From positions 124,001 to 188,000 of the IMG/VR virus record IMGVR_UViG_3300044701_003953: DNA of 64,000 nucleotides; one strand, given 5' to 3'. The notes under the pieces are model-generated. The model was not told the origin of the DNA and did no database searches. It worked only from the letters and a program-made list of their open reading frames with translations. The translations under genes and the position numbers were made by a program. Shown here piece by piece: positions 6,930 through 58,536 of this stretch; position 1 is the first letter of the stretch; every line of letters begins with the position of its first letter.

Positions 6930-7898
6930 ATGGAAAAAAGAACTCTGCGTTGGGTACTAGCCCACGAACCAATCGAGATCTTCATCCGCGCCGCAGAAAA
7001 ATTTGCTAAATCCATCAGCGAGAAGACCAACGGTGCTATCAGCATCGAGATCATGACAGCTGAGCAATATGGCAAACAGTATCACGGTATGGAAAAGGTC
7101 GACACACAGTATCGTTACGATCTCATCAAGCACTTAGAAGCTGGTGAACTCGAAATGAGCCAGATGTACACAACCACATTAGGTACACATTATGACCAGC
7201 AACTGCTGGCCCTTGACATGCCTTACATTTTCGCTGATCACGATCATGTAGCTCGTGTACTTGATGGTGAAATCGGCGTTAGCCTCCGTAAGAGCCTCAG
7301 CGAGAAGACCAACATGGCTTCCCTGGCTTTCACATACTCGGGTGGTTTCCGCGTACTGCCTTCTGCTAAGAAGATCACAAGCATCACAGAACTCGCTGGC
7401 GAAAAAGTCCGCGTTGGTAGCCCTGTTTCGTTAGAAACATTCAAGGCCCTAGGTTGCGAAGCCGTTGACGGCATCAAAATCGAAGAGCTGGGCGAAGCGA
7501 TCGGCGACGGTCGTATCGTTGCTGGTGAATCCACATACCCACGCCTCTACGGTACAGAGCAGAACATCGCTCCTTCCAAGACTGCCAAGGCAGTCATCAA
7601 CACAGAGCACAGCCTATTCTTGACAACTATCCTGATCAACAAGGATATCTGGAATAGCTTCAGCGCAGAACTACAACAGTTCATGCTGGAAGCCGCACAC
7701 GAGGCTGCTCTGGAAGAGCGTAAAGAAGCACTGCTTGACATCCAGAAGAACCAGGCTCGCCTGCGTGCCGACGGTGTTGAAGTGGTTGATCTTCCTGCCA
7801 CAGAAATCGACTTGTTCAAGAACAAGACAGCAGTCGTATACGACGTATTAGCTGACATGTTCCCAGCTGGTCTGATCTCTAGCATCAAGAACGCCTAA
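6930..7898 (+). CDS. dctP: TRAP-transporter substrate-binding protein (DctP family), no signal peptide
   Basis: LALDMPYIFADHDHV, LAFTYSGGFRVL, LAGEKVRV motifs; AGGAG RBS; ATAAATA at 6839-6845. Confidence 0.85.
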   Translation: MEKRTLRWVLAHEPIEIFIRAAEKFAKSISEKTNGAISIEIMTAEQYGKQYHGMEKVDTQYRYDLIKHLEAGELEMSQMYTTTLGTHYDQQLLALDMPYIFADHDHVARVLDGEIGVSLRKSLSEKTNMASLAFTYSGGFRVLPSAKKITSITELAGEKVRVGSPVSLETFKALGCEAVDGIKIEELGEAIGDGRIVAGESTYPRLYGTEQNIAPSKTAKAVINTEHSLFLTTILINKDIWNSFSAELQQFMLEAAHEAALEERKEALLDIQKNQARLRADGVEVVDLPATEIDLFKNKTAVVYDVLADMFPAGLISSIKNA

Positions 7899-7915
7899 TA
7901 AGTGTTTTGATAAAG

Positions 7916-7942
7916 AAAAAGCCCGCTTATGCGGGCTTTTTT
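7916..7942. terminator. Bidirectional intrinsic terminator between convergent dctP and phasin genes
   Basis: AAAAAGCCCGC-TTAT-GCGGGCTTTTTT. Confidence 0.9.
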
Positions 7943-7959
7943 GTTGGCTGTGTAGCGTA

Positions 7960-8250
7960 TTACTCAGCGTCAGCTTTAGAAGCCTTCTTAGAAGAAACAG
8001 AAGGAACTTTGAAGAACTTGGTTAGGTCGAAATGAGTAGCCTCATTGATAGCCTTAACGCCTTCTTCTGTCAGACGTGTACCAACTTCTGTAGCGACCTT
8101 AACTGCGCTCTTTGTGTAAGCGGTCTGGCCGTCGATGAAACTATTCATGGCTGTCTTGATACCGTCGTGTTGTACGAAAGTGTTCACGAATTGCTTCTTG
8201 GCGTTTTGTACAGAGTCGATGTAAAAATCAGGGGTTGTATTGTAAAACAT
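7960..8250 (-). CDS. Phasin-like (PHA granule-associated) protein
   Basis: 96-aa amphipathic helical protein of phasin-like size and pattern (FIDGQTAYTKSAVKVATE); AAGGAG RBS; PhaR-like box upstream. Confidence 0.6.
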   Translation of the reverse strand: MFYNTTPDFYIDSVQNAKKQFVNTFVQHDGIKTAMNSFIDGQTAYTKSAVKVATEVGTRLTEEGVKAINEATHFDLTKFFKVPSVSSKKASKADAE

Positions 8251-8349
8251 TTTGCTTTCTCCTTAGGTTAAGCGAGTTAAATCGTCCCTTGACCCGCACC
8301 ATGCGGCATCTTGGGTTTACTGCATTCATTGATTGTAACATTACTTATA

Positions 8350-8465: not shown

Positions 8466-8747
8466 ATGGAAATTATTATCGCACTAGTAGTAATTGCAGC
8501 TCTTGGGTATTTCATTTTTAGAGGCACCGACGCCAACAAAGATGGTAAAGTGACTGTAGCTGAAGTCAAAGCAGTAGCAGACGTCAACAAAGACGGCAAA
8601 GTTGACATCCAAGATGTCAAGGCCGCTGCCACTAAAGCCAAGACCGCTGTGAAGAAAACAGCGACCAAGGCCGGTGCCAAGACCAAGGCTGTTGTCAAGA
8701 AGGCTACCACTGCTCGTAAACCTGCTGCCAAGAAAACAGCCAAGTAA
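8466..8747 (+). CDS. Membrane-anchored protein with two EF-hand-like loops and a Lys/Ala-rich histone-H1-like tail
   Basis: N-terminal TM helix; DANKDGKVT and DVNKDGKVD; AKKTA-type tail; AGGAG RBS, TAAATA at 8430. Confidence 0.8.
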   Translation: MEIIIALVVIAALGYFIFRGTDANKDGKVTVAEVKAVADVNKDGKVDIQDVKAAATKAKTAVKKTATKAGAKTKAVVKKATTARKPAAKKTAK

Positions 8748-13747: not shown

Positions 13748-14147
13748 TTAAATATCTCTTCAGTTCTTTGTCAGTGGGCTCAACGGCATAGTTATGTTTG
13801 AAAAAGATCTCATAACTGTCCGAGCCGTATTTGCCGATACCATATAACATTTTAGCATCACTGCCGTCCCAAGTCAAGTAGTCTTCGGTCATACCAAACA
13901 ACCTTTTAGTACGCACATTGACCATCCCCAATGGCCGGATCACTTCTTTGACCATCTCGGGGTCTGCCAATGAAAAGAATGCCGGGACAGGCCAGCGTTC
14001 TAGGAACTCTGGCAGCACCCGTTTCACGGGCTTGCGACCAGTTTGGTTCAGCATGATCACTGCCACCATGTGTTGCCAACGACGGACCCATTCTTCGCGG
14101 CCCGGCAGTTGTTGCTGGACCATCAGATCATCGCGCAATGGCTCCAT
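13725..14147 (-). CDS. MBD4-like HhH-GPD DNA glycosylase
   Basis: VAVIMLNQT, LYGIGKYGSDSYEIF...PTDKELKRY resembles the MBD4 catalytic domain; TAATG overlap at 14145-14149. Confidence 0.8.
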   Translation of the reverse strand: MEPLRDDLMVQQQLPGREEWVRRWQHMVAVIMLNQTGRKPVKRVLPEFLERWPVPAFFSLADPEMVKEVIRPLGMVNVRTKRLFGMTEDYLTWDGSDAKMLYGIGKYGSDSYEIFFKHNYAVEPTDKELKRYLNEEISHT

Positions 14148-14515
14148 TATCGTGTCAGGAACGGTTTGAGTTGTGGGGGAGTCCAACCTTCTGGTTTGAG
14201 AACTTTACCATCTTCGCGTTTACGGACTTTACCGGTGGCTGAGTCGATCTTAGCGAAGTTGGTGCGCATGACTTCGTTCCATGCTCCCTCTGCGTCCATC
14301 CCTGCGGAATGTATGGCACCGATAGTGACGACCAGGATATCGATCAGCGCATCGAGTTGTTCGACCGGGTCAGCGTCCACTAGAGCATGGATGAGTTCTT
14401 GATGCTCTTCGTTGATCAATTTGAGATACATGTTATATTGATCGAGATCGAACTTGCCGACTGTTTGGTCGCAGGCTCGCATGAACCGCTCTTGGTCTTG
14501 GAAAGGATTTGTCAT
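14147..14515 (-). CDS. MazG-like / PRA-PH-like NTP pyrophosphohydrolase
   Basis: LINEEHQEL, EQLDALIDILVV, EVMRTNFAK, KREDGKVLKPEGW. Confidence 0.85.
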   Translation of the reverse strand: MTNPFQDQERFMRACDQTVGKFDLDQYNMYLKLINEEHQELIHALVDADPVEQLDALIDILVVTIGAIHSAGMDAEGAWNEVMRTNFAKIDSATGKVRKREDGKVLKPEGWTPPQLKPFLTR

Positions 14516-14518
14516 TTT

Positions 14519-15043
14519 TTATCCTTCGTAGATGGCTGAGTTGGCTTCGTGCTCAAATACTTCCACAGAGCGTAACTTTACACCTTGTCCCACTGGATAA
14601 CGGGCAGAAAATGTTTTTCCATTGGGCAAGGTATATTCGCGACCTTGTTGATAGGTCTCAAGGATGTCTTGCATGGTGTTGTAGGCCAGTTCGGCGAATT
14701 TTTCGCAGCCCACTGCTTCCACGATGCGTAGGTCGCAAATGCCACCTTGCTCCTGGAGCCCCAACTTGGCCATGTTTTTAAAGATCTCAAGATGGGGATC
14801 ATCTGAGGCCACTACCAAAGTGTGATCGAACATGTATTCGCTCCACTCTTTGAATGCTTTCAGTCCACCGAAGTCCATAACCCAATTGCGATCATCAAGG
14901 GTAGTAGACTCAAATGCAAGACGAATGCCAATGCTATAACCATGCAATAGGCTGCAATGACTGTGAGTGCTACGCCATTGACGGAAACAGCACGAAAGGC
15001 CGCGGTCATTACCATAAGTTTTTGTTGAAAGGAATTTTGCCAT
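14519..15043 (-). CDS. queD: 6-carboxytetrahydropterin synthase
   Basis: HSHCSLLHGYS, WVMDFGGLK, FDHT, GCEKFAE, VEVFEH. Confidence 0.92.
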   Translation of the reverse strand: MAKFLSTKTYGNDRGLSCCFRQWRSTHSHCSLLHGYSIGIRLAFESTTLDDRNWVMDFGGLKAFKEWSEYMFDHTLVVASDDPHLEIFKNMAKLGLQEQGGICDLRIVEAVGCEKFAELAYNTMQDILETYQQGREYTLPNGKTFSARYPVGQGVKLRSVEVFEHEANSAIYEG

Positions 15044-15067
15044 CTCTAGTCTCCTGTGTAAGGGGCA

Positions 15068-15124
15068 AGTTTGATGACACGCAGAATTTATAAAGCGGGA
15101 TGAGCGTCATTGAAAGGCCGCTGG
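15068..15124 (-). ncRNA. Candidate cis-regulatory pseudoknot (preQ1-I-like riboswitch variant) in queD 5' UTR
   Basis: AGCGG/CCGCU stem, AUGACGC/GUGUCAU pseudoknot, CAUC-CC junction and A-rich 3' linker; lies between ATAAATA (15134-15140) and the AGGAG SD. Confidence 0.45.
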
Positions 15125-15148
15125 TTGAACAACTATTTATCGCAGTAG

Positions 15149-15967: not shown

Positions 15968-16356
15968 GGTTGTTGGTAATCTTTTTTACGATAGTTGGCT
16001 TGCCCGGGTATGACCCCGCGCACACCGCCTACCGGGTCTTCTATATCGCCTTTGCGTCTCGGGATAAGATGTATGTGTGGATACATGACGGTCTGGCCAG
16101 CAGCCTCGCCCATGTTCATCCCAATGTTGAAAGCGTCGCACTCTCCGAGTTCTACCATCTGTTGACCTGATGCCCATGCCTCGTATAGCGTAGTGCTCAT
16201 CGATACTGGGTCCGTGCTCTTTGGGATAAAGAGTAAGTGACCTTTTGTGACTGGGTAAAGATCGCGGAACACGATATAAGTCATGCCTTCGCGGACCCAA
16301 TTGTCCCAGGGTGCTCTTCCTTCTGTTTTAGCGATGTAGTAATTGTCGTAGAACAT
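15964..16356 (-). CDS. HIT-family nucleotide hydrolase
   Basis: DLYPVTKGHLLFIPK, AGQTVMYPHIHLIPR. Confidence 0.9.
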   Translation of the reverse strand: MFYDNYYIAKTEGRAPWDNWVREGMTYIVFRDLYPVTKGHLLFIPKSTDPVSMSTTLYEAWASGQQMVELGECDAFNIGMNMGEAAGQTVMYPHIHLIPRRKGDIEDPVGGVRGVIPGQANYRKKDYQQP

Positions 16357-16363
16357 GATGTTA

Positions 16364-18339: not shown

Positions 18340-18538
18340 TTTTAAGGTTTTCCCCGAGTTCACGGATCTGTTCTGCGTTAAGGAAGAAATCATAGCTACT
18401 CTCATCGATCTTTTTACCATCGTTGTCGTATTGTTCGCCTGTGAATCTTAAGTGCTTGAGATCCGCTGGCATCACGCAATCATTGATCGTGACACGGATT
18501 TTAAAGGCTTGCCCGTCATTTGCTAAGAACTGTTTCAT
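18326..18538 (-). CDS. Hypothetical protein
   Basis: Start MKQFL at 18538 by ATGA overlap with the small upstream gene. Confidence 0.65.
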   Translation of the reverse strand: MKQFLANDGQAFKIRVTINDCVMPADLKHLRFTGEQYDNDGKKIDESSYDFFLNAEQIRELGENLKSAVA

Positions 18539-18878: not shown

Positions 18879-18889
18879 GATCGTTTCCT

Positions 18890-24705: not shown

Positions 24706-24708
24706 TTT

Positions 24709-32957: not shown

Positions 32958-34127
32958 TCAACCCTGGAAACTTTCTAATAGTTCCATAGCCGCTTCAGTG
33001 ACTCCGGGTTCCCAGGTATGGTATCCTACCCAATCATGATCGTAATACATCGGGGAGATCCACACTATTCTGCGCTCGAAATCGGGACTTTTAGATGCCA
33101 CTTTGATTTTTTGGTCGGCATAAGAACGATTGCCATCAAACTCGAAAATATATCGTTTAGCTTCGAGTTTCACACCGGCACGGCCCTTGTGTACATGTTC
33201 GAAATGATGCTGTAAATTACTGTAACTCCATTGCACGAATTCGTCTGTATTAAAATAACTGTACTGTGCATAATCACTATGGTGTTTTCTGTCGATCGGC
33301 TTCTTGAAATCTTTGCGAAGGTGCATAAATGGTCTCACTATTGCGGTAGCCCATTTAAAATTTACATAATGCCACCACCACCAATCTGAGATAGTCTTGA
33401 CATTTTCGGGATTGACTTCTATGAGGTTTTCGGTGATCCTTCTTACATACCATTGACCGAATTCTGGATCGGCATTGATGCTTTGATCACGATCAAAGAA
33501 ACTAGCGATGAGATGCTGATTGTCTTTAAATGGTAGGAGATGTTGATCGTTATTGACCAGATGCTTGAACGCCGGAAGAGTTGGCCCAAACACAGCGTCG
33601 CCTGGATCGCCATGTATGAGTATGTATTTTTCTAAGGTTTCATTGCACATCTCAAAATCTAACAGTTGTATGTATCGGAATCTTCCTGATATATATTTTC
33701 TAAAAAAGTCAAAGTTTTCGATGATCGATTCGGTGCTCATGACTATATCAATGATCCCTAAATCGGATTCGGAAAGATTCTTTAAGAATGAAACTAATAC
33801 AGCAGTAGAATCAATTCCGCCGCTCCACATCAGTGCTATTCTTTTGTTTGCCTTTTTAGCGTAGTTAAAGACTTCTATAGCTCGTTGATCAAACAAGTCG
33901 TGTAACTTATAGTCGACAAATTTAAGTTCAGGCATAGGATAATGATGATCGTATGGTGCTTGCCATGGAGTGGAAAAATTTCCAGTCCTGGCACGCAGAT
34001 CTTTAGCGCCTATCACCAAGTGCGCAAACTTTGACCATAGGTGCCCGCTTCGGTGCTTGATATCAAGTTCGGCTACTAGATGATTGTCAACAGCTAGGCT
34101 GTTTTTTATACCTTCAACATGGTTCAT
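32958..34127 (-). CDS. Asparagine-synthetase-C-terminal-like ATP pyrophosphatase (copy 2)
   Basis: PP-loop WSGGIDST; HGDPGDAVFG aligns with the AsnB GEGADE.FG motif; no N-terminal Cys glutaminase domain. Confidence 0.7.
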   Translation of the reverse strand: MNHVEGIKNSLAVDNHLVAELDIKHRSGHLWSKFAHLVIGAKDLRARTGNFSTPWQAPYDHHYPMPELKFVDYKLHDLFDQRAIEVFNYAKKANKRIALMWSGGIDSTAVLVSFLKNLSESDLGIIDIVMSTESIIENFDFFRKYISGRFRYIQLLDFEMCNETLEKYILIHGDPGDAVFGPTLPAFKHLVNNDQHLLPFKDNQHLIASFFDRDQSINADPEFGQWYVRRITENLIEVNPENVKTISDWWWWHYVNFKWATAIVRPFMHLRKDFKKPIDRKHHSDYAQYSYFNTDEFVQWSYSNLQHHFEHVHKGRAGVKLEAKRYIFEFDGNRSYADQKIKVASKSPDFERRIVWISPMYYDHDWVGYHTWEPGVTEAAMELLESFQG

Positions 34128-34797
34128 TTTTTAGAAGTTCAATTGATTTATTGATCGATTCGGTGAAATAGTATGCACTAATAGGTATCAGTCTGATCTT
34201 TTTCTCGATGTCTGCTTTAATCTCATTGAGAGGACGACTATAATCTAGATCCGATAAAATGCGAAAAAGTATGCCTTGGAATTCTTCGAGTATTTTTTTC
34301 GGTACATCTTTGTTGATTATTTCTCGATCGACAAACTCTTGTACAGCGACATCATTGGGCACTGTCAAGGATATAAACTTTTTAAACACTCTTAGACCTT
34401 TTTTGAGAGTCTCGACCTGTCGTAGATCCCTATCAAGTATATGATAGTTATGATCTCTAGATTTTTGTATAAAATCAAAAAGGAAATGCATTTTTTCTTT
34501 ATACTCTATATCGTCCTGCGTGAACTTAGTCCTTGCTGGCACGAGCCTATATGAAGGATTTGTAAAATACATGTCGATCTCTATCCGTATTTTTTCTCCA
34601 TTGGCTATAGTGACGTTCATGCATCGATCATTGTTCAGGAGATTTGGTCGGTAGTTAACGATGCCGTTTAAATCTACTAGATACAGCAATTCATGGTTCA
34701 TGGTTATCAACTGCAAATATTTTAAACTTTCGTAATCACTGTTAACCATAATGAATCTATTACGAAACGTATTGAACAATGCATATTCATTTGACAT
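34114..34797 (-). CDS. Hypothetical partner protein (copy 2)
   Basis: Start MSNEY at 34797 with AAGGA RBS; homologous to 35962-36699 (TVPND...FVD.EI). Confidence 0.7.
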   Translation of the reverse strand: MSNEYALFNTFRNRFIMVNSDYESLKYLQLITMNHELLYLVDLNGIVNYRPNLLNNDRCMNVTIANGEKIRIEIDMYFTNPSYRLVPARTKFTQDDIEYKEKMHFLFDFIQKSRDHNYHILDRDLRQVETLKKGLRVFKKFISLTVPNDVAVQEFVDREIINKDVPKKILEEFQGILFRILSDLDYSRPLNEIKADIEKKIRLIPISAYYFTESINKSIELLKNEPC

Positions 34798-34804
34798 AAA
34801 ACTA

Positions 34805-35965
34805 TTATCCTTTAAAAGTTTCAAGTCGATAACAAACTTGCTCATTGAGATAGTCTTCCCAACGAAAGTAGCCTTTCCAATTTCGATCAAAGCATATCGG
34901 GTTGTCGGATGAAGTGCGAGTAATGACGTCGGGTGGGGCACCGGCTAACTTTGGTTTATTCTCAAAATAGAATTCATTTTTATCGAGCTCGAAAATATAT
35001 CGTTTGGCTTCGATCTTGTGAGACTTCATGCCGTCCTTTAAAAGATTTTTGAGATTGCTATAACTCCAATGCTGGAAGTATTCGGTGTTATAGAAAGTAT
35101 TTTCTGCGAACGTTTTTTGATTTTCGATGCTGATGCCTTTTTTTACATCTTTTTGGGAAAAGATAAAAGGTCTCTGGCAGCTGAATTCCCATTTGTAATT
35201 GTAATATGTCCACCACCACCAATCACTGACGGTAGTCACGTTGTCGGGGTTCACTTCTTCGATGTTATCGGTTATTTTTTTGACTATCCAATTTCCAAAA
35301 TTTGGAACAGAGTACGGCAGATGTTTACCGGGCTGACAGAGATCAATGAGTTTTTTAAAATGTTTTTTATAACTTTCTTTATGTTCGCCACTGATTATCA
35401 ACTCTCGATATGCAACAGTAGTTGGGCCGTAGAGACAATCTGCTGGGTCGCCATGCACTAAAATATTTTTATCAAGAAAATCGTCATTAAGGTCTAACAA
35501 CGAGTAATGGAAACATTTTATTTTATTAGAAATAAATTTCATATAAAATTCAAAATTTTCCACCATTGAGCCAGTGTTCATCACCACAGTCAATAATTCG
35601 AGATCTGTGCTACTTAGATTTTTAATAAAAGACGCCAAGACTGCGGTAGAGTCAATACCACCACTCCAAAGTACAAATATTTTTTTATTTGTTTTTTTGG
35701 CCACAGAAAATATTTCTAATGCTCTTCGATCTAATAGATCTGAGAGAGAATCGTTGATGAATTTGAACTCGGGCGCAGAATAAAAACTATTGCTAGGAGC
35801 ATTCCACGGAGTAGTGAAAGTACCCAATCGTGCTCTTAGGTCGTGTACTCCGATAAAACTATCTAGAGTCGATTTCCACATTTTTCCGTAGGGATTTTTT
35901 AGGTTGCCGGCAATGTTGAAGTTGCGCACGTCAACCATGATGGAATCTTCTATTTTTATAGTCAT
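34805..35965 (-). CDS. Asparagine-synthetase-C-terminal-like ATP pyrophosphatase (copy 1)
   Basis: WSGGIDST, HGDPADCLYG, SDWWWW, WSYSNL, EAKRYIFE shared with copy 2. Confidence 0.7.
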   Translation of the reverse strand: MTIKIEDSIMVDVRNFNIAGNLKNPYGKMWKSTLDSFIGVHDLRARLGTFTTPWNAPSNSFYSAPEFKFINDSLSDLLDRRALEIFSVAKKTNKKIFVLWSGGIDSTAVLASFIKNLSSTDLELLTVVMNTGSMVENFEFYMKFISNKIKCFHYSLLDLNDDFLDKNILVHGDPADCLYGPTTVAYRELIISGEHKESYKKHFKKLIDLCQPGKHLPYSVPNFGNWIVKKITDNIEEVNPDNVTTVSDWWWWTYYNYKWEFSCQRPFIFSQKDVKKGISIENQKTFAENTFYNTEYFQHWSYSNLKNLLKDGMKSHKIEAKRYIFELDKNEFYFENKPKLAGAPPDVITRTSSDNPICFDRNWKGYFRWEDYLNEQVCYRLETFKG

Positions 35966-36699
35966 TGTTCTTTTAACACTGATAGTAAGGTTTTTTTAAA
36001 AACATCAGATAAGAATATTTTTTTCCAATTGGTATTGACGTAGTCCAACTTACCAAATTCCAATGAGTTTATTTTTTCTTCGATGATTTTTTTTGCATCG
36101 TCTTTTCGATAGTTTACGTTAATCAATAAATTTATTATATCTGATTTAAATGGTCTTGCTCGTCGAATAGCGTTGTTTCTAATTTCAATTTCCCAGTCAA
36201 CAAAGTTATCGATGTTTTCGTCGTTTGGTATAGTGAGTTTTACAAACTCTTTTAACTCGATAAACCCGTTGATTTCATCGCGGAACCTTCTTTTTTCTTG
36301 TTCCTCAAATTCGTCGACGATTTTTTCCAGGACGTGCAAAATTTTCTGCAATAACAATAAGTTGGATCTCAATATAGGGTCTGGAGGCGAATGCGAGTCC
36401 ACGATTTTAGTTAGATGCATACCGGGGTCGGCGTCGAGTTTGATGTGTTTTACTGCTTTTGGTATACAGCCGAACTCATGACAGTTGTTATTGTCTATAT
36501 TGGAAGTATCTTTTTCAGATTCGAATTTTGATATGTTGATACAGAAAAAAAACTTCTGTTTCATAAGCACGAACTGTAACAGCTTCATGACTTTATGATT
36601 ATCATCTATTAGATAAAAGCAATTTTCGGGCAACCCAAGAAGACCATATACGTCGGCATCGGATTCGAATCTTCTAAAAAAGGGAAAATGTGCTGTCAT
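35962..36699 (-). CDS. Hypothetical partner protein (copy 1)
   Basis: 245 aa; TIPND...FVDWEI; preceded by TTGACT-17-TAAAAT promoter (36728-36756). Confidence 0.7.
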   Translation of the reverse strand: MTAHFPFFRRFESDADVYGLLGLPENCFYLIDDNHKVMKLLQFVLMKQKFFFCINISKFESEKDTSNIDNNNCHEFGCIPKAVKHIKLDADPGMHLTKIVDSHSPPDPILRSNLLLLQKILHVLEKIVDEFEEQEKRRFRDEINGFIELKEFVKLTIPNDENIDNFVDWEIEIRNNAIRRARPFKSDIINLLINVNYRKDDAKKIIEEKINSLEFGKLDYVNTNWKKIFLSDVFKKTLLSVLKEQ

Positions 36700-36828: not shown

Positions 36829-38112
36829 TCAGTGGAACTGCTCTTCCTCTGTGGAACCTTTGAGGGCTTGTGTGGATGCGTCAGCTTCGATGGTCGTAGT
36901 GACAGCGTCGAAGTAACCTGTGCCTACTTCCCTTTGATGCTTAACAGCTTCAAAACCACGGCTCGCATCCGCGAACTCACGTTCTTGTAACTCCACGAAA
37001 GCAGACATACCGTTCCTAGCATAACCATGAGCAAGGTCAAACATGCCATGATTAAGAGCATGGAATCCAGCAAGTGTGATGAATTGAAAACGGTAGCCCA
37101 TTGCTCCAAGTTCACGTTGGAAACGGCTAATTGTGTCTGCATCTAAGTTCTTCCTCCAGTTGAATGATGGCGAGCAGTTGTAGGCTAACATCTTACCTGG
37201 ATGGTGCTTGTGTACTTGCTCTGCGAATTCCTTCGCGAATTGTAAGTCGGGCTTTCCTGTTTCACACCACACGAGGTCTGCGTAAGGTGCGTAGGCGACG
37301 GCTCTGCTGACTGCTTGATCGATTCCGTTACGGGTTCTGTAGAATCCTTCAACAGTTCTTTCACCAGTAAGGAAAGGCTTGTCGTTGTCATCAATATCGC
37401 TAGTGATAAGGTCACCGGCTTCGGCATCAGTTCGTGCAATAACAAGAGTAGGCACGCCCATAACATCACTAGCGAGGCGAGCGGCAACAAGTTTATTGAT
37501 GGCTTCTCTGGTTGGTACAAGGACTTTTCCTCCCATGTGTCCGCATTTTTTAGCAGACGCTAATTGGTCTTCGAAGTGTACACCAGCGGCACCAGCTTCG
37601 ATCATGGCCTTCATCAGTTCAAATGCGTTTAACACGCCACCAAAGCCGGCTTCGGCATCAGCTACGATGGGTGCGAAGAAGTCGTGATCATCTTTACCTT
37701 CCATCCACTGTATCTGATCGGCACGACGAAACGTGTTGTTGATCTTGCGGACCACGGCGGGCACAGAGTTCACTGGATACAAGCTCTGATCAGGATACAT
37801 CTCTCCGGCCAAGTTGGCATCACCTGCCACTTGCCAACCGCTTAGGTATATGGCTTTGAGTCCTGCTTTGACTTGCTGTAACGCCTGCATGCCTGTCAAC
37901 GCACCCAAGGTGTTGACATAGTCCTCAGTGGTCAGTAGGTTCCATAATTTCTTGGCTTGGTCTATCGCGAACTGATCGGGATATACACGACTGCCTTGCA
38001 AGCGAACTACATCATCGGCGGTGTAGTCTCGTTTGATGCCCAACCACCTTGGGTTGGTACTCCAATCCTGTTGTATCTGATAGGCTTTCCAGCTACGAGT
38101 GTTTTCAGACAT
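36829..38112 (-). CDS. aceA: Isocitrate lyase
   Basis: KKCGHMGGK signature, [43 protein letters not shown]; GAGGAG RBS. Confidence 0.98.
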
Positions 38113-52728: not shown

Positions 52729-52756
52729 AAAAAAATGCCCCTTGCGGGGCATTTTT
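52729..52756. terminator. Intrinsic terminator after the tctC-like genes
   Basis: AAAAAAATGCCCC-TTGC-GGGGCATTTTT. Confidence 0.88.
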
Positions 52757-53591
52757 ATTTGGCGACATAACTCTTGATATATCGATCAATCCACACTTCG
52801 ACACGATCTAGCAGTGCTTTATCGCTGGTGGTGGTTCTTGCTACATAATTTCCTTGGTCTAGTAGACCCACAAATCCCTTGGACTCTAGTGCCGACTTGA
52901 CTCGAGCACGTTGATCTGCGCTGTCAACGCCATTGACTAATACCGTGACAGGGATACGCAAATCGGGAATTTTCATCTTAAGCTGTTTTCCGATGTAGTT
53001 TTGATCCACAGGATTGGTACTGGCCACACATTCAATGGCACCCGAGGACTCTTGTTTCTGCGCAGCAGAAGCACCCAATAGGCCTAGGTCAAGGTCGCCG
53101 CTCATGATCTGCAGCAAGACATCCTTGCTGCCTGAAAATGGTAGAGCTTTGATGCTGGTGCCATTTTGTGCATTGATGTCAGCCACGATGGGTCCGGGTT
53201 GCATCACTGATGGAATACCAAAAGTGGCATTGGCAGAACGGAAATTCTTGCCGGATCCTTTTTTGGTGCAGATCTTGAAAAATTGTTCGCCGTAAAACAC
53301 GATGTTCTTTTCTGTGATCTGTGGTTTGCAAATCTGCCCTTTGGCAACAGATGCAAAAGCCAGGCTGGTGCCATACACCAGAACACTGTCCTTGGTATCC
53401 TGGAACTTCTTGACGCCGTCGAGACAACTATCAGCTTGGTAAAACTTCGAGCCCGCAAGATTTTCTTGAAGAGTCATAGCAACAGTAGTGGTTGGACTGT
53501 TCCTTGATGAAGTAGAAATCACTGTGATGTCGGAGGCTTGAGCCATCAAGGGCATAAAGGCAGCAATTACAGCCAATTTGATTTTTTTCAT
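52755..53591 (-). CDS. tctC: Divergent TctC/Bug-like periplasmic binding protein (copy 2)
   Basis: Signal peptide; LPFSGSKDVLLQIMSGDLDLG resembles Bug VPY.G....DLL.G.VD; follows tctA. Confidence 0.6.
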   Translation of the reverse strand: MKKIKLAVIAAFMPLMAQASDITVISTSSRNSPTTTVAMTLQENLAGSKFYQADSCLDGVKKFQDTKDSVLVYGTSLAFASVAKGQICKPQITEKNIVFYGEQFFKICTKKGSGKNFRSANATFGIPSVMQPGPIVADINAQNGTSIKALPFSGSKDVLLQIMSGDLDLGLLGASAAQKQESSGAIECVASTNPVDQNYIGKQLKMKIPDLRIPVTVLVNGVDSADQRARVKSALESKGFVGLLDQGNYVARTTTSDKALLDRVEVWIDRYIKSYVAK

Positions 53592-53594
53592 TTA

Positions 53595-54422
53595 TTATTT
53601 CCCGTAGTTTGAATGAGATCGTTGGATATATGCATTTACATTCTTTACCAGTTCCTCGGAACCTTGGTAAGTCACATTTGCATACTCACCTTTATTTAAT
53701 AGAGTTTTTACGTCGTTGGAAATAATTCCTTGTTGTACCAGAGACAGAGCCTTGCTATCTTTGATGTTGTGAAGTATCAAAGTTTGTATGCGGATATCGG
53801 GCTGTTTCATTTTCAAAGCACTACCTAAAAACTTCGAGCTTTTGGGATCTGTGGATGCGATACACTCGATGGTGCCTAGTTTTTCCTGGGAGGCTGCGGT
53901 GCTGGTTCCGATCAGACCGAGATCAAGGTCGCCGCTCATGATCTGCAGCAAGACATCCTTGCTCCCGGCAAAAGGCACAGGGCGTAGCGTAGTGGCGTTT
54001 TGTGCATTGATGTCGGCCACGATGGCGTCTACAGGTTGCACAGAGGCCATCCCAAAAGTGGCATTGGCAGAACGGAAATTCTTGCCGGATCCTTTTTTGG
54101 TGCAGATCTGATAGTACTGCTCGCCATAGAACAAGATATTATTGGCTCGGATACTGGTGTCACAGGGTTTGTTTTTTCTCAAACCCGTGATGGCCAAATT
54201 GGTTCCATAGACTAGTAGACTGTTGTTGGTGCTTTCATATTTGGCCACAGCAGCCTGGCAGCTTTCGCCCTGATGGTACGCACTACCAGGGATATTTTTT
54301 TGCACAGTCATGGCCAAAGTGGCCACCGGCGATGTTTTTGCTTGTGGATTGATTACAAGGGTTTCAGCAGCTACCGAGACCAGCGGCAGGCATGCTAGAG
54401 CGGATAAGATGATTTTTTTCAT
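53595..54422 (-). CDS. tctC: Divergent TctC/Bug-like periplasmic binding protein (copy 1)
   Basis: Signal peptide; VPFAGSKDVLLQIMSGDLDLG. Confidence 0.6.
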   Translation of the reverse strand: MKKIILSALACLPLVSVAAETLVINPQAKTSPVATLAMTVQKNIPGSAYHQGESCQAAVAKYESTNNSLLVYGTNLAITGLRKNKPCDTSIRANNILFYGEQYYQICTKKGSGKNFRSANATFGMASVQPVDAIVADINAQNATTLRPVPFAGSKDVLLQIMSGDLDLGLIGTSTAASQEKLGTIECIASTDPKSSKFLGSALKMKQPDIRIQTLILHNIKDSKALSLVQQGIISNDVKTLLNKGEYANVTYQGSEELVKNVNAYIQRSHSNYGK

Positions 54423-54440
54423 GGTATTTTTCCTTTTGAA

Positions 54441-55727
54441 TCAGATAGTGGAGATGACCTGTAGAGCAGTCCATATGACTTTGTCCCCCAGGATAAACGC
54501 GAATAGCATGGGAATAGGATCGATGTTCTTTTTATCTAGTGCATAACCGATCGCGCTAAAAAACAAGAACAAGCAAACATATTTCAATGCTCCCAACTCT
54601 GAATAGTAGAAATCTATCAACCCCAGGCCTGCTATCAACAACAACAGTATGAATCTAAATCTCGACTGTAGAAACAACAGGGCACGAGCATAGACGTCCA
54701 ACAAACTGGTACTCAGGAAGTAGTAGATCACAGCCAGCAACACACAGGCCAGTTGTATGGTCAACAACATACGACCCACTTCTTCGAGATTGGCCAGGTC
54801 CGGCCAGTCAATGAGTTTGGTCTGCAGGATCTGTAACACTATGACTTCACCCACAGTGATGGGTATGCCCACGATCAACAACGGTAACATGCTAGTGATC
54901 ATGGCCGAGTTGTTGGCCGATTCTGCCGAAGTGACTTTTTTACTCAAATCTTTTTCGGTGTGGAACGCCAAGTTGCTGCTCAAAGTCGCCGACGGTCCTG
55001 GTATGAGCCCGATCATGCTGCCAATGACGCCGCCTTTGACAGCACTGGTCCATGGCATATCACCAATCACAGATTCAGCATTACGAGATTGCCATATTTC
55101 ACTGTCATATTTTTTAAACAGCTCGGGCACGATCAACAAGCCCAAGGCCATGGAAAAAAACGTGGTGTTCTGGAAAGTCTCTTGTAAGTGATACCAGGCT
55201 TCTGGCAAAGCATAATTGTTTTTTGGGCCCAGTAGAATACCAAACATCACTAACACCAATGCCACCGGTCTGTTTTTACTGAGTAATACAAAAAACAACA
55301 ATGCGAATCCGAAGATCACGGCCTTGACCCAGATTTTGTTGAACCAAAACATGAAATCGTACGACCCCAGCACAAACACAGCCACACATGCCACTGATGC
55401 AGCCACAGATGCTACCACTGATCCACGTGCGGTGTATTTGATCAGTTTGATACGATCTTTGATGCCCAAGGGTTTGATCGAATTCAAGTAGATCAAACTC
55501 GACGTTTCGCCAGGTACACCAGTGGTTATGGCAGCCACGCTGCCAAAATACTGCGACCCAATGATCACGGCTGCCCAGTATAGGAATATGTCAAACACCG
55601 ACATGAATTCCACAAACGGGAACATCAACATCATGCCCAAAGCAATAGGCATGGCCGGGAAAAGTCCTACCAACATCCCGGCCATGATTCCTGAAACAAA
55701 AGTTATGATTGTTGAAAGTTCGATCAA
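54441..55727 (-). CDS. tctA: TctA-family tripartite tricarboxylate transporter permease
   Basis: GSQYFGSVAAITTGVPGETSS, GLIPGPSATL, SAESANNSA, LIVGIPIT; polytopic; TTG start. Confidence 0.85.
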   Translation of the reverse strand: MIELSTIITFVSGIMAGMLVGLFPAMPIALGMMLMFPFVEFMSVFDIFLYWAAVIIGSQYFGSVAAITTGVPGETSSLIYLNSIKPLGIKDRIKLIKYTARGSVVASVAASVACVAVFVLGSYDFMFWFNKIWVKAVIFGFALLFFVLLSKNRPVALVLVMFGILLGPKNNYALPEAWYHLQETFQNTTFFSMALGLLIVPELFKKYDSEIWQSRNAESVIGDMPWTSAVKGGVIGSMIGLIPGPSATLSSNLAFHTEKDLSKKVTSAESANNSAMITSMLPLLIVGIPITVGEVIVLQILQTKLIDWPDLANLEEVGRMLLTIQLACVLLAVIYYFLSTSLLDVYARALLFLQSRFRFILLLLIAGLGLIDFYYSELGALKYVCLFLFFSAIGYALDKKNIDPIPMLFAFILGDKVIWTALQVISTI

Positions 55728-55785
55728 TTGATTTCTCTATTCGATGTAAAAATTTATCAATGGAAAATCACTGGTGCGCCCCACT

Positions 55786-56475
55786 TCAGTGGGTGGGTTT
55801 GAGAGCGCCGGTCTTGCTGGCCAAGATGAGTTGTGTGCGGTTCTGCACACCGTATCGTCGAATGATGGCCGATACATGACCTTTGACGGTGTCTTCGCTG
55901 ACCTGTAAGATCTCAGCTATCTTGCGATTGGGCAGGCCGCGTTGTGTGATCAACTTGAACACTTCGGCCTGGCGATCCGTGAGACCGATCTCTCGCTTGC
56001 GCACCACTGCTCGCTGGAGTTCGGGTTTGACCACGATGCTGGGCCAGTGGCTTTCACCGCGGGCCAGAGTCTGATATGCTGTCACTGAATGTTCAGCATC
56101 AAAGAATCGCATGCCCGGAATCACGCCTAGAACATCGTTGCGTTTGAGTTTGGCCAAGAGATCGGCGTCCAGGAGTTCGGGTACTACCACAGCGATGTCC
56201 ACCCGCTGGCGCTCGGCCACGAAGCGCGACAACGATGACAGCATGCTCAACACTTCGTCGATCATCATGTCATTGCGTTCCAGACAGTCCAAGCGGAACA
56301 CCACCAAGGCGTCCTCGGGCTCTTCGAGCTGGCGCATGAGATTGGGCCAGCCGGCTGTGATGGTTATGGCGATGCCTACCGCGGCATGATGGTCGACCAC
56401 ACGCTGGATAGACTCCAACTCGACCTCAGAATCGGTGCTGGGCGAGAAGTAAATGATTTTTCGGGATTTGGCCAT
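55786..56475 (-). CDS. LuxR/NarL-type HTH transcription regulator with degenerate receiver-like domain
   Basis: LTDRQAEVFKLI..GLPNRKIAEIL.VSEDTVKGHVSAI.R..GVQNRTQL. Confidence 0.88.
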   Translation of the reverse strand: MAKSRKIIYFSPSTDSEVELESIQRVVDHHAAVGIAITITAGWPNLMRQLEEPEDALVVFRLDCLERNDMMIDEVLSMLSSLSRFVAERQRVDIAVVVPELLDADLLAKLKRNDVLGVIPGMRFFDAEHSVTAYQTLARGESHWPSIVVKPELQRAVVRKREIGLTDRQAEVFKLITQRGLPNRKIAEILQVSEDTVKGHVSAIIRRYGVQNRTQLILASKTGALKPTH

Positions 56476-56619
56476 TTTGTTGATTTTACTATGACCTGGT
56501 GTTGCCTGTCAAGGCCGTAAATGCGGGTATGGAGGAATTTGGTTAGCCAAATATTTAGTAGTCAGTGACAAAAAAGAACTCTTCTGTTTTTATACGAGCA
56601 TATGGGTACCTAAATATCT

Positions 56620-57390
56620 GTGTCACTTCCGCCAAAGGAGGCACACTTGACCAAAAGAAAACATCGCGACTCATATTCGCATCATCCGCAAGCCCTTCAA
56701 CAACAGCACATAGACTACGAACATTATCGATCAAATCGACAAAATATACAGCTCATCCCTAAGAGTCTTGGGCAAGAGAGGTATATAGAGTTGCTGACCG
56801 ACCCAGCACGAACGATCATATTCGCCACAGGCCCAGCCGGTACTGGCAAGACCATGTTGGCGGTGTTGGCAGCACTGCGAGCACTCAAGAATGGCGAGTG
56901 CAAGAAGATAGTGATCACTAGACCGGCAGTGGGTGTAGATGACGAGAAGCACGGTTTCCTACCCGGAGACTTGAACCAAAAGATGGAACCCTGGACCCGT
57001 CCCATATTCGACTACATGGGCGAATATATGAGACCCCAGGAAATCGCAAGGATGCTAGACGAACAGATCGTGGAAATTTCCCCACTGGCATTCATGAGAG
57101 GACGCACATTTAAAAATGCGTGGATCATCGCAGACGAAATGCAGAATGCCACGCCCTCGCAGATGAAGATGCTGCTTACGCGACTCGGCGAAGGTTCCCG
57201 TATGGTAGTAACTGGTGACACGAAACAAGCAGATCGCCAGGACCCTGACAACGGACTACTTGATTTCAAGAAAATAGTAGCAGATTATGATGGAAAATTA
57301 CTACATATTTCCGGTGTAGAGTTTGATTATCGTGATATAAAGCGCCACCCAGCGGTGTCAGAAGTACTAAAACTTTACGGTGAAATCTAA
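56620..57390 (+). CDS. phoH: PhoH-like ATPase
   Basis: GPAGTGKT, ITRPAV, GFLPGDL..K..PW, PLAFMRGRT, DEMQN, GD.KQAD; TAAATA at 56611. Confidence 0.95.
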   Translation: MSLPPKEAHLTKRKHRDSYSHHPQALQQQHIDYEHYRSNRQNIQLIPKSLGQERYIELLTDPARTIIFATGPAGTGKTMLAVLAALRALKNGECKKIVITRPAVGVDDEKHGFLPGDLNQKMEPWTRPIFDYMGEYMRPQEIARMLDEQIVEISPLAFMRGRTFKNAWIIADEMQNATPSQMKMLLTRLGEGSRMVVTGDTKQADRQDPDNGLLDFKKIVADYDGKLLHISGVEFDYRDIKRHPAVSEVLKLYGEI

Positions 57391-57447
57391 AGGTTTTTGC
57401 CATAATCATAAATAAAGTTATCATATCACTCAATGGAGACTTCCCCA

Positions 57448-58536
57448 ATGACACAATTAACTGGAAAAAATGGACGTAGAAAAGTCCGTTGGATCATAGC
57501 TCACTTCCCACTAGAACTGTTTGTTCGTGCGGCCAAGGCATTTCAGCTCGAAATTGAAAAACTTTGCCCCGGGCAGTTCGACATCGAGATCCATACTATC
57601 GGTTCTTATCTAAGAGCTTACGGTAACGAACTCACTGAAGAACAGAAAAAGAATCTTGGATTCGTGGCCCCACGTATTCCTGGACTCGAAGATCCCAAGA
57701 ACACAGTTGCAACTAAAAACCCAGACAGCCTAGTTTTTGCTAAAGACTTCAACCAACTCAAAGTTTGGTGGAAGACATTGTTTGAGGTGATGAAAGAGCA
57801 GAAGTTTGAGATGAGCCAGACACAGGTCAACATCGTTGGTAGCCATCTGCACACCAACTTCCATGCCATCGATCTTCCTTACCTTTTCAAAGATCACGAT
57901 CACGTAGCTAAAGTACTCGACGGCGAAGTCGGACAAAAGATCAGCGACCAAGTAGCAAAAGACACTGGTGTAAAAGCACTGGGTTACACATACTCGGGCG
58001 GATATCGAATCATCGGTAGTACCGAGGGTATTACAAAACTTGATGATCTTAAAGAAAAGAAATTCATCAGCTTTACTGCACCTAGCAATATGTTGTTCAG
58101 ACTCGCAGACGTACCACGTCTTCCACGTTACCTCACAACAGCAGAAGACCTCGGTGATATCGCTGAGCAAGGTGGTGCCATTGAGACCACATATCTGCGC
58201 TTTGCTGGTAAGAATGTTCTTAAAACAAACCACAGCATGTTCATGACATCGATCCTGACCAGCGAAAACTTCATAAATTCGTTAACAGAAGACCAGCGTG
58301 CCGCTTTTACAGAAGCTGCACATCGTGTTGCCAAAATCGAAAGACTTTGGTCTGTTGAAGATGCCGCCAAGTATGAGCAGGATGCTGAAAGCCGTGGCGT
58401 TACTATCGTTCCAGTTAACGAAGAAGACGACACAAGACTCAGAACAGCAGCCAAGGAAATTTACAAGAAAGAAAATCTTGAGAAGATTGGTATCGACTAC
58501 ACATTAGTAGAAGAAATCATCAAACTCGGTAAGTAA
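57448..58536 (+). CDS. dctP: Second DctP-family substrate-binding protein, no signal peptide
   Basis: AIDLPYLFKDHDHV, LGYTYSGGYRII; GGAG RBS favours the start at 57448; ATAAATA at 57408-57414. Confidence 0.82.
   Translation: MTQLTGKNGRRKVRWIIAHFPLELFVRAAKAFQLEIEKLCPGQFDIEIHTIGSYLRAYGNELTEEQKKNLGFVAPRIPGLEDPKNTVATKNPDSLVFAKDFNQLKVWWKTLFEVMKEQKFEMSQTQVNIVGSHLHTNFHAIDLPYLFKDHDHVAKVLDGEVGQKISDQVAKDTGVKALGYTYSGGYRIIGSTEGITKLDDLKEKKFISFTAPSNMLFRLADVPRLPRYLTTAEDLGDIAEQGGAIETTYLRFAGKNVLKTNHSMFMTSILTSENFINSLTEDQRAAFTEAAHRVAKIERLWSVEDAAKYEQDAESRGVTIVPVNEEDDTRLRTAAKEIYKKENLEKIGIDYTLVEEIIKLGK

What the first reader, a model, noticed from the sequence alone, without database searches (positions are those of the whole stretch)
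6930..58536. Two TRAP substrate-binding proteins with no signal peptide and no DctQ/M in the window
Both DctP homologs (6930-7898 and 57448-58536) start almost directly at the first mature-domain strand (TLRWVLAHEP; KVRWIIAHFP), with no hydrophobic Sec/lipoprotein leader. The TctC-like proteins here do have one. Canonical DctP is periplasmic (established). Each gene is isolated on the plus strand with its own TAAATA motif and terminator. Inference: these are cytoplasmic small-molecule binders repurposed as metabolite sensors or sponges, possibly for a signalling or defence molecule.
Basis: partly seen in the sequence, partly recalled or inferred. Interest (0 to 1): 0.75.

Follow-up and report, generated by a model that had tools for sequence, protein, structure and literature searches.

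The report
Leaderless phage TRAP-type binding proteins
A freshwater jumbo phage carries three copies of a "periplasmic" TRAP-transporter binding protein that have no export signal; they belong to a large, previously undescribed clade, mostly from phages, that probably binds an organic acid inside the infected cell.

Summary
Window 6930-7898 and 57448-58536 encode complete DctP-family (PF03480) binding proteins that start at the first strand of the mature fold. Each has an in-frame stop just upstream, so no signal peptide is possible. The window is part of a 207-kb jumbo myophage record. That record has a third leaderless copy and no DctQ or DctM.

Both proteins belong to large families whose listed members are all leaderless: over 1300 and 761 database proteins, on 500 and 198 IMG/VR contigs. 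In a tree, the leaderless proteins form one well-supported clade nested among signal-bearing homologues from Bdellovibrionota and Elusimicrobiota. Neighbouring phage binding proteins (TctC-like and others) keep normal signal peptides.

The "sponge or defence sensor" reading gets no support. All three genes carry the phage's ATAAATA motif, which also precedes tail sheath, tube and fibre genes. In other phages and in cellular genomes they cluster with PP-loop (asparagine-synthetase-like) ATPases, 2OG-oxygenase-like proteins, TctC/TctA components or an MFS transporter. Gene 2 is paired with phoH rather than isolated.

Best reading: a non-exported organic-acid binder that captures or hands over a metabolite in a late phage metabolic module. 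The ligand is unknown.

The parts
6930..7898 (+). DctP1: leaderless DctP-family binding protein, 322 aa
   Evidence: PF03480 at 133 bits. AF2 pLDDT 94.5, TM 0.76-0.89 to solved TRAP SBPs. In-frame stop at 6906-6908. Both arginines equivalent to SiaP R127/R147 are present.
6839..6845 (+). ATAAATA late-type promoter-like motif, 85 nt before the DctP1 start; AGGAG ribosome-binding site at 6915-6919
7915..7942 (.). Hairpin terminator with A-tract and U-tract (bidirectional type) after DctP1
   Evidence: Free energy -19.3 kcal/mol, z-score -4.45.
56620..57390 (+). PhoH-like ATPase, directly upstream of DctP2
   Evidence: PF02562 at 230.8 bits. The phoH->dctP2 pair is conserved in L056, L158/L159, L160 and L161-L167.
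57408..57414 (+). ATAAATA motif in the 57-nt phoH-dctP2 spacer
   Evidence: The spacer has no hairpin.
57448..58536 (+). DctP2: divergent leaderless DctP-family protein, 362 aa (alternative ATG at 57433), with an ordered insertion of about 45 residues after helix 2
   Evidence: PF03480 at 92.6 bits. AF2 pLDDT 93, TM 0.60-0.80 to TRAP SBPs. The position equivalent to SiaP R147 is Phe and is never Arg in the subfamily.
58549..58580 (.). Hairpin terminator after DctP2
   Evidence: Free energy -19.4 kcal/mol, z-score -5.42.
54441..55727 (-). TctA-family permease (context gene). It sits directly next to leaderless DctP in other phages.
   Evidence: PF01970 at 118 bits. Adjacent to DctP in L086, L089 and L122.
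52755..54422 (-). Two tandem 278- and 275-aa proteins with Sec signal peptides downstream of TctA; putative periplasmic binding proteins
   Evidence: N-termini. No Pfam or PDB sequence match. Weak TctC-like motif by hhalign.
32958..36699 (-). Two pairs of [245/275-aa ORF][PP-loop SGGIDST ATPase, 386/389 aa]. Their homologues lie next to leaderless DctP in other phages and in cellular genomes.
36829..38112 (-). Isocitrate lyase heading the PP-loop cluster, with ATAAATA at 38139-38145
   Evidence: PF00463 at 361.6 bits. Motif position.

Best explanation
DctP1 and DctP2, and the third copy outside the window, are complete two-lobed TRAP-type ligand-binding proteins that have lost the export signal and stay in the cytoplasm of the infected cell. 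They are transcribed from the phage's late-type ATAAATA promoters. DctP2 is probably also co-transcribed with phoH.

They do not serve a DctQM permease. I infer that they bind a small organic acid inside the cell and hold it or pass it on, acting as a metabolite sink or chaperone. The likely partners are the enzymes they are repeatedly linked to: PP-loop, asparagine-synthetase-like ATPases that activate carboxylates, and cupin/2OG-oxygenase-like proteins. These often sit downstream of phage- or host-encoded secondary uptake systems (TctA plus signal-bearing TctC-like proteins, a TRAP QM pair, or an MFS transporter).

Shown here: the fold, the absence of a leader, clade structure, gene neighbourhoods, and retention of the carboxylate-binding arginines in DctP1 and DctP3.

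Inferred: cytoplasmic location, late timing, ligand class, and the hand-over role.
For: No leader is possible in these genes.

The leaderless state is conserved.
- All 120 listed homologues of DctP1 and all 120 of DctP2 are leaderless.
- All 57 non-redundant viral sequences are leaderless.
- The leaderless sequences (57 viral and 16 from cellular MAGs) form one clade with SH-like support 100, nested in a grade of signal-bearing Bdellovibrionota and Elusimicrobiota proteins.

These phages do use Sec leaders on other binding proteins.
- The TctC-like SP304 family has them; its profile matches PDB 7ndr at E 5e-20.
- So do the two window proteins downstream of TctA (the 'c64' cluster), and the SBP of a full DctQ-DctM-SBP operon in related phage G008.

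No permease is needed on the phage. G000 has no DctQ or DctM. G006 (98% complete) and G007 (94% complete) have no DctM and no TctA.

Gene neighbourhoods.
- Among 54 non-redundant DctP1-type loci, PP-loop families lie within two genes in 21 and 14 loci, TctC-like in 20, and DUF2061 in 10.
- Among 61 DctP2-type loci, PP-loop genes lie within 6 kb in about 25.
- The same [about 250 aa][PP-loop][DctP] trio occurs in cellular MAG contigs together with BKACE, SDR and AMP-ligase genes.
- [MFS][cupin-like 200 aa][DctP] occurs in Bacteriovoracaceae between flagellin genes.

The PP-loop protein is asparagine-synthase-like.

The fold is complete, and R141 and R161 are conserved in at least 90% of the clade.

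Timing. The ATAAATA motif is positionally specific: 26 of 39 copies have a same-strand start within 120 nt, against 3-11 for controls. It precedes sheath, tube, adaptor and fibre genes, all three dctP genes and the ICL/PP-loop cluster.
Against: - No localisation, ligand or interaction data exist.
- In this phage the dctP genes are not adjacent to the PP-loop genes. DctP1 sits alone between a MoxR/VWA block and unknown genes.
- About 40% of viral loci show no PP-loop neighbour.
- DctP2 lacks the canonical arginine, so it may not bind a carboxylate in the usual way.
- Late timing rests on a motif, not on RNA data. Only fragments of relatives were seen in one metatranscriptome.
- A binding protein acting as cytoplasmic chaperone or sink has no precedent in the DctP family. 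This rests on my own knowledge and on searches.
Confidence: 0.4

Rival explanations
1. Virion-associated or lysis-released lectin-like protein. It would be made late, need no signal because it leaves the cell at lysis, and use the SBP cleft to bind an acidic sugar or organic acid on the host surface or in the environment (decoration or adhesin).
For: The late-type motif is shared with tail sheath, tube and fibre genes. DctP3 lies inside the tail module, just after the tail tube gene. In several marine phage contigs the DctP gene borders gene families shared among phages that I did not identify. The closest solved relatives include sialic-acid and sugar-acid binders.
Against: - The protein is only the bare SBP domain, with no extra domain to anchor it to a capsid or tail.
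- The pocket is highly conserved across phages from different habitats, unlike receptor-binding proteins.
- Leaderless clade members sit in metabolic and transport operons of cellular genomes.
- The consistent neighbours are enzymes, not structural genes.
Confidence: 0.15
2. It is still a transporter component. The protein would reach the periplasm by a non-classical route, or act after partial envelope damage late in infection, and feed host DctQM or the phage TctA permease to boost uptake (a classical auxiliary metabolic gene).
For: The fold is a complete TRAP SBP and the selectivity arginine is conserved in DctP1 and DctP3. Phage TctA lies next to leaderless DctP in L086, L089 and L122, and 1.7 kb away in the window. 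Related phage G008 encodes DctQM.
Against: - There is no leader in about 300 sequences, while neighbouring SBPs of the same phages keep Sec leaders. In G008 the DctQM operon has its own signal-bearing SBP.
- Near-complete relatives have no permease at all.
- No TRAP SBP is known to work with TctA (review PMC5812351).
Confidence: 0.1
3. Ligand sensor that regulates a partner protein. For DctP2 the partner would be the PhoH ATPase it is co-transcribed with, or the divergently encoded LuxR-type regulator.
For: The phoH->dctP2 pair is conserved down to 47-49% identity in this jumbo-phage lineage. There is no terminator between the two genes. The LuxR/GerE HTH gene lies at 55786-56475. DctP2 has a remodelled pocket and an ordered insertion.
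Against: The pair is found in only 5 of 61 non-redundant DctP2-type loci, so it is lineage-specific. DctP1 and DctP3 have no such partner. No interaction has been tested.
Confidence: 0.1
4. One reading: a cytoplasmic sponge or sensor for a nucleotide-type immune signal or other defence molecule.
For: The proteins are non-exported, high-affinity-type binding folds, present in multiple paralogues in a phage. No function is known for them; phrog_31178 is listed as 'unknown function'.
Against: - The promoter motif is of the late type.
- The neighbourhoods are metabolic and transport, and include cellular operons.
- The pocket is strongly conserved, and the carboxylate-type arginines are retained.
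- PADLOC gives no hit.
- From my own knowledge, known sponges are small oligomeric proteins of unrelated folds.
Confidence: 0.06

Closest known systems
TRAP-transporter substrate-binding proteins (DctP family, PF03480; e.g. SiaP, IseP, DctPAm, PA5167)
   Same: The fold is the same two-lobed structure over its full length: TM 0.76-0.89 for DctP1 and 0.60-0.80 for DctP2. The family motifs are shared (PFLF-DHDH, TYSGGFR, GESTYPR). DctP1 and DctP3 keep both arginines used for carboxylate binding.
   Different: There is no signal peptide or lipobox. There is no dctQM in the phage or in near-complete relatives. The gene context is PP-loop ATPases and 2OG-oxygenase-like genes instead of dctQM. DctP2 lacks the selectivity arginine and carries an insertion of about 45 residues.
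Signal-peptide-bearing DctP homologues of Bdellovibrionota and Elusimicrobiota (e.g. loci L022, L025-L028, L030-L041)
   Same: They are the nearest cellular relatives, at 30-40% identity, and share the N-terminal WVLAHEP motif of strand 1.
   Different: They carry classical Sec leaders and form the grade from which the leaderless clade emerges.
Orphan TctC/Bug proteins of the TTT family
   Same: They are binding proteins that greatly outnumber or lack nearby permease genes (review PMC5812351). TctC-like genes are frequent neighbours of the leaderless DctP genes.
   Different: Orphan Bug proteins are still exported. They belong to a different SBP family.
Phage-encoded periplasmic binding proteins used as auxiliary metabolic genes (e.g. 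cyanophage PstS; named from my own knowledge)
   Same: They are a phage copy of a host uptake binding protein.
   Different: Those proteins are exported and plug into the host permease. Here the export signal is absent and the link is to cytoplasmic enzymes.

Membership tests
TRAP transporter SBP (DctP, PF03480) | Sequence and fold of the type-II two-lobed DctP domain | tested here: met
   PF03480 at 133 and 92.6 bits. AF2 models with pLDDT 94.5 and 93 match solved TRAP SBPs.
TRAP transporter SBP (DctP, PF03480) | N-terminal Sec/Tat signal or lipoprotein anchor giving an extracytoplasmic location | tested here: not met
   In-frame stops lie 7 sense codons upstream. There is no hydrophobic segment before strand 1. 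The same holds in 240 listed homologues. Actual localisation cannot be tested with these tools.
TRAP transporter SBP (DctP, PF03480) | Cognate DctQ and DctM membrane subunits | tested here: not met
   None in the 207-kb record. There is no DctM in the 98%- and 94%-complete relatives. The host genome is unknown, so a host partner cannot be excluded.
TRAP transporter SBP (DctP, PF03480) | Conserved arginine that pairs with the ligand carboxylate (SiaP R147; PMC4646407, abstract) | tested here: met
   Met for DctP1 (R161) and DctP3, and conserved in at least 90% of the clade. Not met for DctP2, where the position is Phe and is never Arg in 31 aligned subfamily members.
Tripartite tricarboxylate transporter (TctABC) as partner system | TctA permease plus TctB plus an exported TctC binding protein | tested here: inconclusive
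   TctA is present (PF01970, 118 bits). Two signal-bearing proteins lie downstream, with only weak TctC similarity. TctB was not looked for. DctP-family proteins are not known TTT components.
Phage anti-defence signal sponges (Tad1/Tad2/Acb2-type) | Homology or fold of a known sponge, with binding of an immune signalling nucleotide | not tested
   No anti-defence library was available. PADLOC (defence systems) gave no hit. The fold is a TRAP SBP, not a known sponge fold. Binding cannot be tested here.
Phage anti-defence signal sponges (Tad1/Tad2/Acb2-type) | Early expression and location among counter-defence or accessory genes | tested here: inconclusive
   The promoter-like motif is the one shared with tail and head genes, and the neighbours are metabolic. 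No time-resolved RNA data are available.

The most novel reading that the evidence does not exclude
Cytoplasmic DctP-family proteins would be a new functional class of binding protein working on the inner side of the membrane. A phage-borne metabolite trap would receive the substrate of secondary transporters (TTT, TRAP or MFS) in the cytoplasm and deliver it to PP-loop amidoligases or 2OG-oxygenase-like enzymes. This would pull uptake forward and channel a host or environmental organic acid into a late phage-specific pathway, for example modification of virion components or of a metabolite pool.
Probability: 0.2. Interest if true: 0.85.

Novelty: new variant of a known kind. Interest (0 to 1): 0.66.

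Why it matters
TRAP binding proteins are defined as extracytoplasmic. A large, ancient, conserved clade without any export signal breaks that rule. It is found on hundreds of uncultured phage contigs, and in predatory bacteria inside transport and enzyme operons.

This points to an unrecognised use of the SBP fold inside cells. It also ties together several very common phage genes of unknown function: PP-loop Asn-synthetase-like proteins, 2OG-oxygenase-like proteins and PhoH.

In viromes these genes are automatically labelled as C4-dicarboxylate transport genes, and they could be counted as uptake auxiliary metabolic genes. That reading is probably wrong.

The proteins are small, soluble and model with high confidence, so ligand identification is directly feasible.

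Tried and rejected
- **Upstream start or missed leader:** rejected, because in-frame stops lie 7 sense codons upstream.
- **Tat signal from the RRK in DctP2:** rejected. The residues that follow form strand 1 and helix 1 of the fold and contain charged residues.
- **Assembly or annotation artefact:** rejected, because the leaderless state recurs in all homologues examined.
- **TctC (PF03401) in the record:** no hit.
- **Cultured-phage relatives:** tblastn against 50,697 phage records gave only five weak hits at 23-28% identity. BFVD holds only fragments from uncultured phages.
- **Literature:** six searches found no description of leaderless or phage DctP proteins. Many hits were the nucleotide dCTP.
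- **Isocitrate lyase as an obligate partner:** rejected. It is absent from four of five related records.
- **phoH pairing as a general feature:** rejected. It is found in 5 of 61 loci.
- **Maximum-likelihood tree with the mixture model:** it did not finish in time, so FastTree was used. The placement of DctP2 is a long-branch problem and is not interpreted.
- **Terminator scan:** it missed both hairpins, which folding then confirmed.
- **RNA evidence:** only short contigs of relatives at 90-95% identity in one metatranscriptome, which does not prove transcription.
- **The roughly 250-aa partner ORF family:** no informative match.

Full report
**What the window is.** The 64-kb window is bases 124001-188000 of a 207,520-bp IMG/VR virus record that CheckV estimates as 59% complete. 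Its own DctP2 protein is also recorded on a 339,769-bp contig.

The gene content is that of a large myophage. It includes:
- a family-B DNA polymerase, 51% identical to Sinorhizobium phage Phosso and 43-49% to Agrobacterium phage Atu_ph07 and jumbo phages of Yersinia, Erwinia and Serratia (352-358 kb);
- tail sheath, tube and adaptor genes;
- PhoH, a MoxR-like ATPase with a VWA partner, and ClpB- and DnaJ-like proteins.

The DNA is found in freshwater metagenomes. Small contigs carrying 94%- and 72%-identical copies of the two genes are binned in a Polynucleobacter MAG. This is a weak hint at the host.

**The observation.** Both ORFs are real DctP-family genes (PF03480, 133 and 92.6 bits).

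Neither can have a signal peptide. TAA stops lie in frame at 6906-6908 and 57409-57411, and the coded N-termini run straight into the first beta-strand.

AlphaFold2 models built on family alignments are confident (pLDDT 94.5 and 93). They place strand 1 at residues 4-10 and 11-17. They superpose on solved TRAP binding proteins over their whole length:
- DctP1: TM 0.76-0.89 (IseP, SiaP, 4xfe, DctPAm, PA5167);
- DctP2: TM 0.60-0.80.

A third leaderless paralogue lies at G000 16360-17307 on the minus strand. There is no DctQ, DctM or Pfam-level TctC anywhere in the record.

They follow a TctA-family permease (54441-55727) and do have classical Sec leaders. Their TctC homology could not be confirmed.

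Both dctP genes are followed by strong hairpin terminators. DctP2 is not isolated: it lies 57 nt behind phoH with no intervening hairpin.

**The leaderless state is a family property, not an accident.**
- A search with DctP1 found more than 1300 proteins. The best 120 (44-95% identity, 312-342 aa) all begin within a few residues of the motif (K/R)xxWVLAHEP(I/Y)xLF(L/I)RAA.
- A search with DctP2 found 761 proteins at E<=1e-10. The best 120 all begin RRK(V/I)RW(L/I)IAH(F/Y/H)P, with no hydrophobic segment.
- IMG/VR holds 500 and 198 contigs encoding relatives.

A scan of GTDB species genomes with patterns specific to the clade returned 64 loci. Most are from Bdellovibrionota, with some from Elusimicrobiota, Myxococcota and a few Pseudomonadota MAGs. 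About 31 of these carry clear Sec leaders in front of the same WVLAHEP strand. About 16 are leaderless.

In a FastTree phylogeny of 110 mature domains, the leaderless sequences (57 viral and 16 cellular) form one clade with SH-like support 100. That clade is nested in a grade of signal-bearing proteins. The simplest history is a single loss of the leader followed by long retention.

DctP2 sits on a long branch, and I do not interpret its position.

**These phages do use signal peptides where export is wanted.**
- The frequent neighbour family SP304 is a TctC/Bug protein. Its profile hits the TTT binding protein 7ndr at E 5e-20 and the terephthalate binding protein at 2e-16, and its members have Sec leaders.
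- Related phage G008 encodes a full DctQ-DctM operon whose own 363-aa binding protein starts MKKTLVGSIVAGALALFSTGVLA.

Two near-complete relatives that carry leaderless DctP genes, G006 (354 kb, 98%) and G007 (345 kb, 94%), have no DctM and no TctA. The leaderless proteins therefore do not depend on a phage-encoded permease.

**What they are linked to.** I called ORFs in 54 non-redundant DctP1-type viral loci and clustered them. The families most often found within two genes are listed below.

| Neighbour family | Loci of 54 |
|---|---|
| PP-loop ATPases, first family (SGGxDS motif) | 21 |
| PP-loop ATPases, second family | 14 |
| Signal-bearing TctC-like family | 20 |
| DUF2061 small membrane protein | 10 |
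| ~250-aa unknown family | 5 |
| 2OG-oxygenase-like family | 4 |

(Supporting calls: 52, 60, 76.)

TctA plus a signal-bearing protein of about 270 aa sits directly beside DctP in L086, L089 and L122. In 61 non-redundant DctP2-type loci, PP-loop genes lie within 6 kb in about 25.

The PP-loop protein resembles asparagine-synthetase C-domains without a glutaminase domain. Its nearest clusters are about 90% viral.

The same [about 250 aa][PP-loop][leaderless DctP] trio occurs in cellular MAG contigs of Pseudobdellovibrio, Burkholderiales and Xanthobacteraceae. In Pseudobdellovibrio it sits with BKACE, SDR and AMP-dependent ligase genes.

In Bacteriovoracaceae the leaderless gene closes an [MFS transporter][200-aa protein][DctP] operon that lies between flagellin genes. 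The 200-aa protein has a cupin or 2OG-oxygenase-like predicted fold, and its nearest relatives are viral.

In the window itself the PP-loop genes are present but not adjacent. Two [ORF][PP-loop] pairs lie at 32958-36699, headed by an isocitrate lyase gene at 36829-38112.

The phoH->dctP2 pair is conserved in the jumbo-phage lineage down to about 47% identity. It is not conserved across the wider subfamily, where it occurs in 5 of 61 loci.

**Timing.** ATAAATA occurs 39 times in the record. Of these, 23 are in the 7% of sequence that is intergenic, and 26 have a same-strand start codon within 120 nt. Same-composition heptamers give 3-11.

The motif precedes the tail sheath, tail tube, head-tail adaptor, fibre-like and virion structural genes. 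It also precedes all three dctP genes, the ICL/PP-loop cluster, and the ClpB-like and cytidylyltransferase-like genes.

By analogy with the T4 late promoter TATAAATA (established knowledge), I read it as a late-type promoter. This is an inference; there are no time-resolved RNA data. One aquatic metatranscriptome contains short contigs of relatives at 90-95% identity, which does not prove transcription.

By contrast, the LuxR-TctA operon sits behind an 11/12 sigma70-like promoter. A repeated sigma70-like promoter cassette serves other minus-strand genes.

**Ligand.** In DctP1, DctP3 and at least 90% of their clade, both arginines that align with SiaP R127 and R147 are kept (GGFR, KVR). R147 is the carboxylate selectivity filter of TRAP binding proteins (PMC4646407; alignments).

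About 30 positions are invariant across 27 sequences that are 31-71% identical to DctP1, including H12, Q78, E200, R205 and H227. Whether they line the cleft was not checked on the model. This argues for one conserved organic-acid ligand.

The DctP2 subfamily is equally conserved. It never has the second arginine (Phe, Val or Leu instead), and it carries an ordered insertion between residues about 60 and 105. Its ligand, or the way it binds, differs.

I could not identify either ligand. The solved structures closest in sequence are annotated only as TRAP SBPs. They include sugar-acid, sialic-acid, isethionate and C4-dicarboxylate binders.

**Mechanism and rivals.** The best-supported reading is a non-exported, late-made organic-acid binder acting with PP-loop carboxylate-activating enzymes and 2OG-oxygenase-like proteins. 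Often this would be downstream of secondary uptake systems, as a cytoplasmic sink or hand-over protein.

I rate non-export at about 0.8 and the specific role at about 0.4.

The rivals are:
- a virion-associated or lysis-released lectin-like protein (late motif, DctP3 in the tail module);
- a still-periplasmic transporter component that uses an unknown export route;
- a ligand sensor for PhoH or the LuxR-type regulator (DctP2 only);

The sponge idea is the weakest, for four reasons: late-type motif, metabolic neighbourhoods that include cellular operons, a strongly conserved carboxylate-type pocket, and no PADLOC hit. It cannot be excluded without binding assays.

**Novelty.** UniProt and IMG label such genes automatically as TRAP solute receptors. 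PHROGs lists the family as unknown function. None of the literature searches found a description of a leaderless or phage DctP clade. No close homologue is present in 50,697 deposited phage genomes.

It is a new variant of a known protein kind, with a location and partners that contradict the family's definition.

Noticed in passing
window 36829-38112 (-): A phage-encoded isocitrate lyase (PF00463, 361.6 bits, KKCGHMGGK motif) with an ATAAATA motif upstream. It heads the cluster with the two PP-loop ATPase pairs. It is present in close relative G010 but absent from four other related records.
   Followed up: partly
window 52755-56475 (-): An operon-like block behind an 11/12 sigma70-like promoter (56512->56483): a LuxR/GerE HTH protein, a TctA-family permease, and two tandem Sec-signal proteins of 275 and 278 aa. 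This looks like a phage-encoded secondary uptake system. TctB was not looked for.
   Followed up: partly
window 6729-6756, 60306-60333 and about 5159-5186 (promoter reads on the minus strand): A repeated sigma70-like promoter-plus-leader cassette (TTGACC-N17-TACAAT followed by TATAGGTATACAGTTAA..AGGAG) lies upstream of three minus-strand genes. The same stretch shows excess depth and many partial contigs in metagenomes.
   Followed up: partly
whole record; window copies at 6839, 9476, 15134, 23584, 29908, 38139, 40570, 42244, 43790, 46831, 52698, 57408: ATAAATA behaves as a strand- and position-specific promoter-like motif. Elsewhere in the record it precedes tail sheath, tube, adaptor and fibre-like genes, so it is probably the late promoter of this phage group.
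   Followed up: yes
window 32958-36699 (-): Two tandem pairs of an unknown 245/275-aa ORF and a 386/389-aa PP-loop (SGGIDST) asparagine-synthetase-like protein. The family is about 90% viral in the Atlas and has no Pfam or PHROG assignment.
   Followed up: partly
L155 (related phage G008, bases 14000-28000): Five consecutive paralogues of fatty-acid-desaturase-like membrane proteins, followed by a complete DctQ-DctM-SBP (with signal peptide) operon, a PP-loop gene, TctA and a signal-bearing binding protein of about 276 aa.
   Followed up: no
G000 16360-18200 (outside the window; L001/L240): The third leaderless DctP lies inside the tail module, directly after the tail tube gene and an ORF fragment that I read, by eye only, as possibly a TnsA-type endonuclease. 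It has its own ATAAATA motif and terminator, like an inserted moron.
   Followed up: partly
window 8466-8747 (+): A 93-aa plus-strand ORF with EF-hand calcium-binding motifs (PF00036, E 5e-8) and a lysine- and alanine-rich tail.
   Followed up: no
window 44466-47682 (-): A ClpB-like two-AAA ATPase (761 aa, phrog_4871) and a protein of 282 aa (phrog_14336) that I take to be DnaJ-like. In related phage contigs (L005, L158) a DnaJ-domain protein next to ClpB recurs near the DctP genes.
   Followed up: no
L011, L012, L023, L056 (GTDB MAG labelled uncultured Polynucleobacter): Four small contigs of one Polynucleobacter MAG carry phage-type leaderless DctP genes. One reproduces the TctA-LuxR-PhoH-DctP2 arrangement. 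These are probably phage contigs binned with their host, or contamination.
   Followed up: partly
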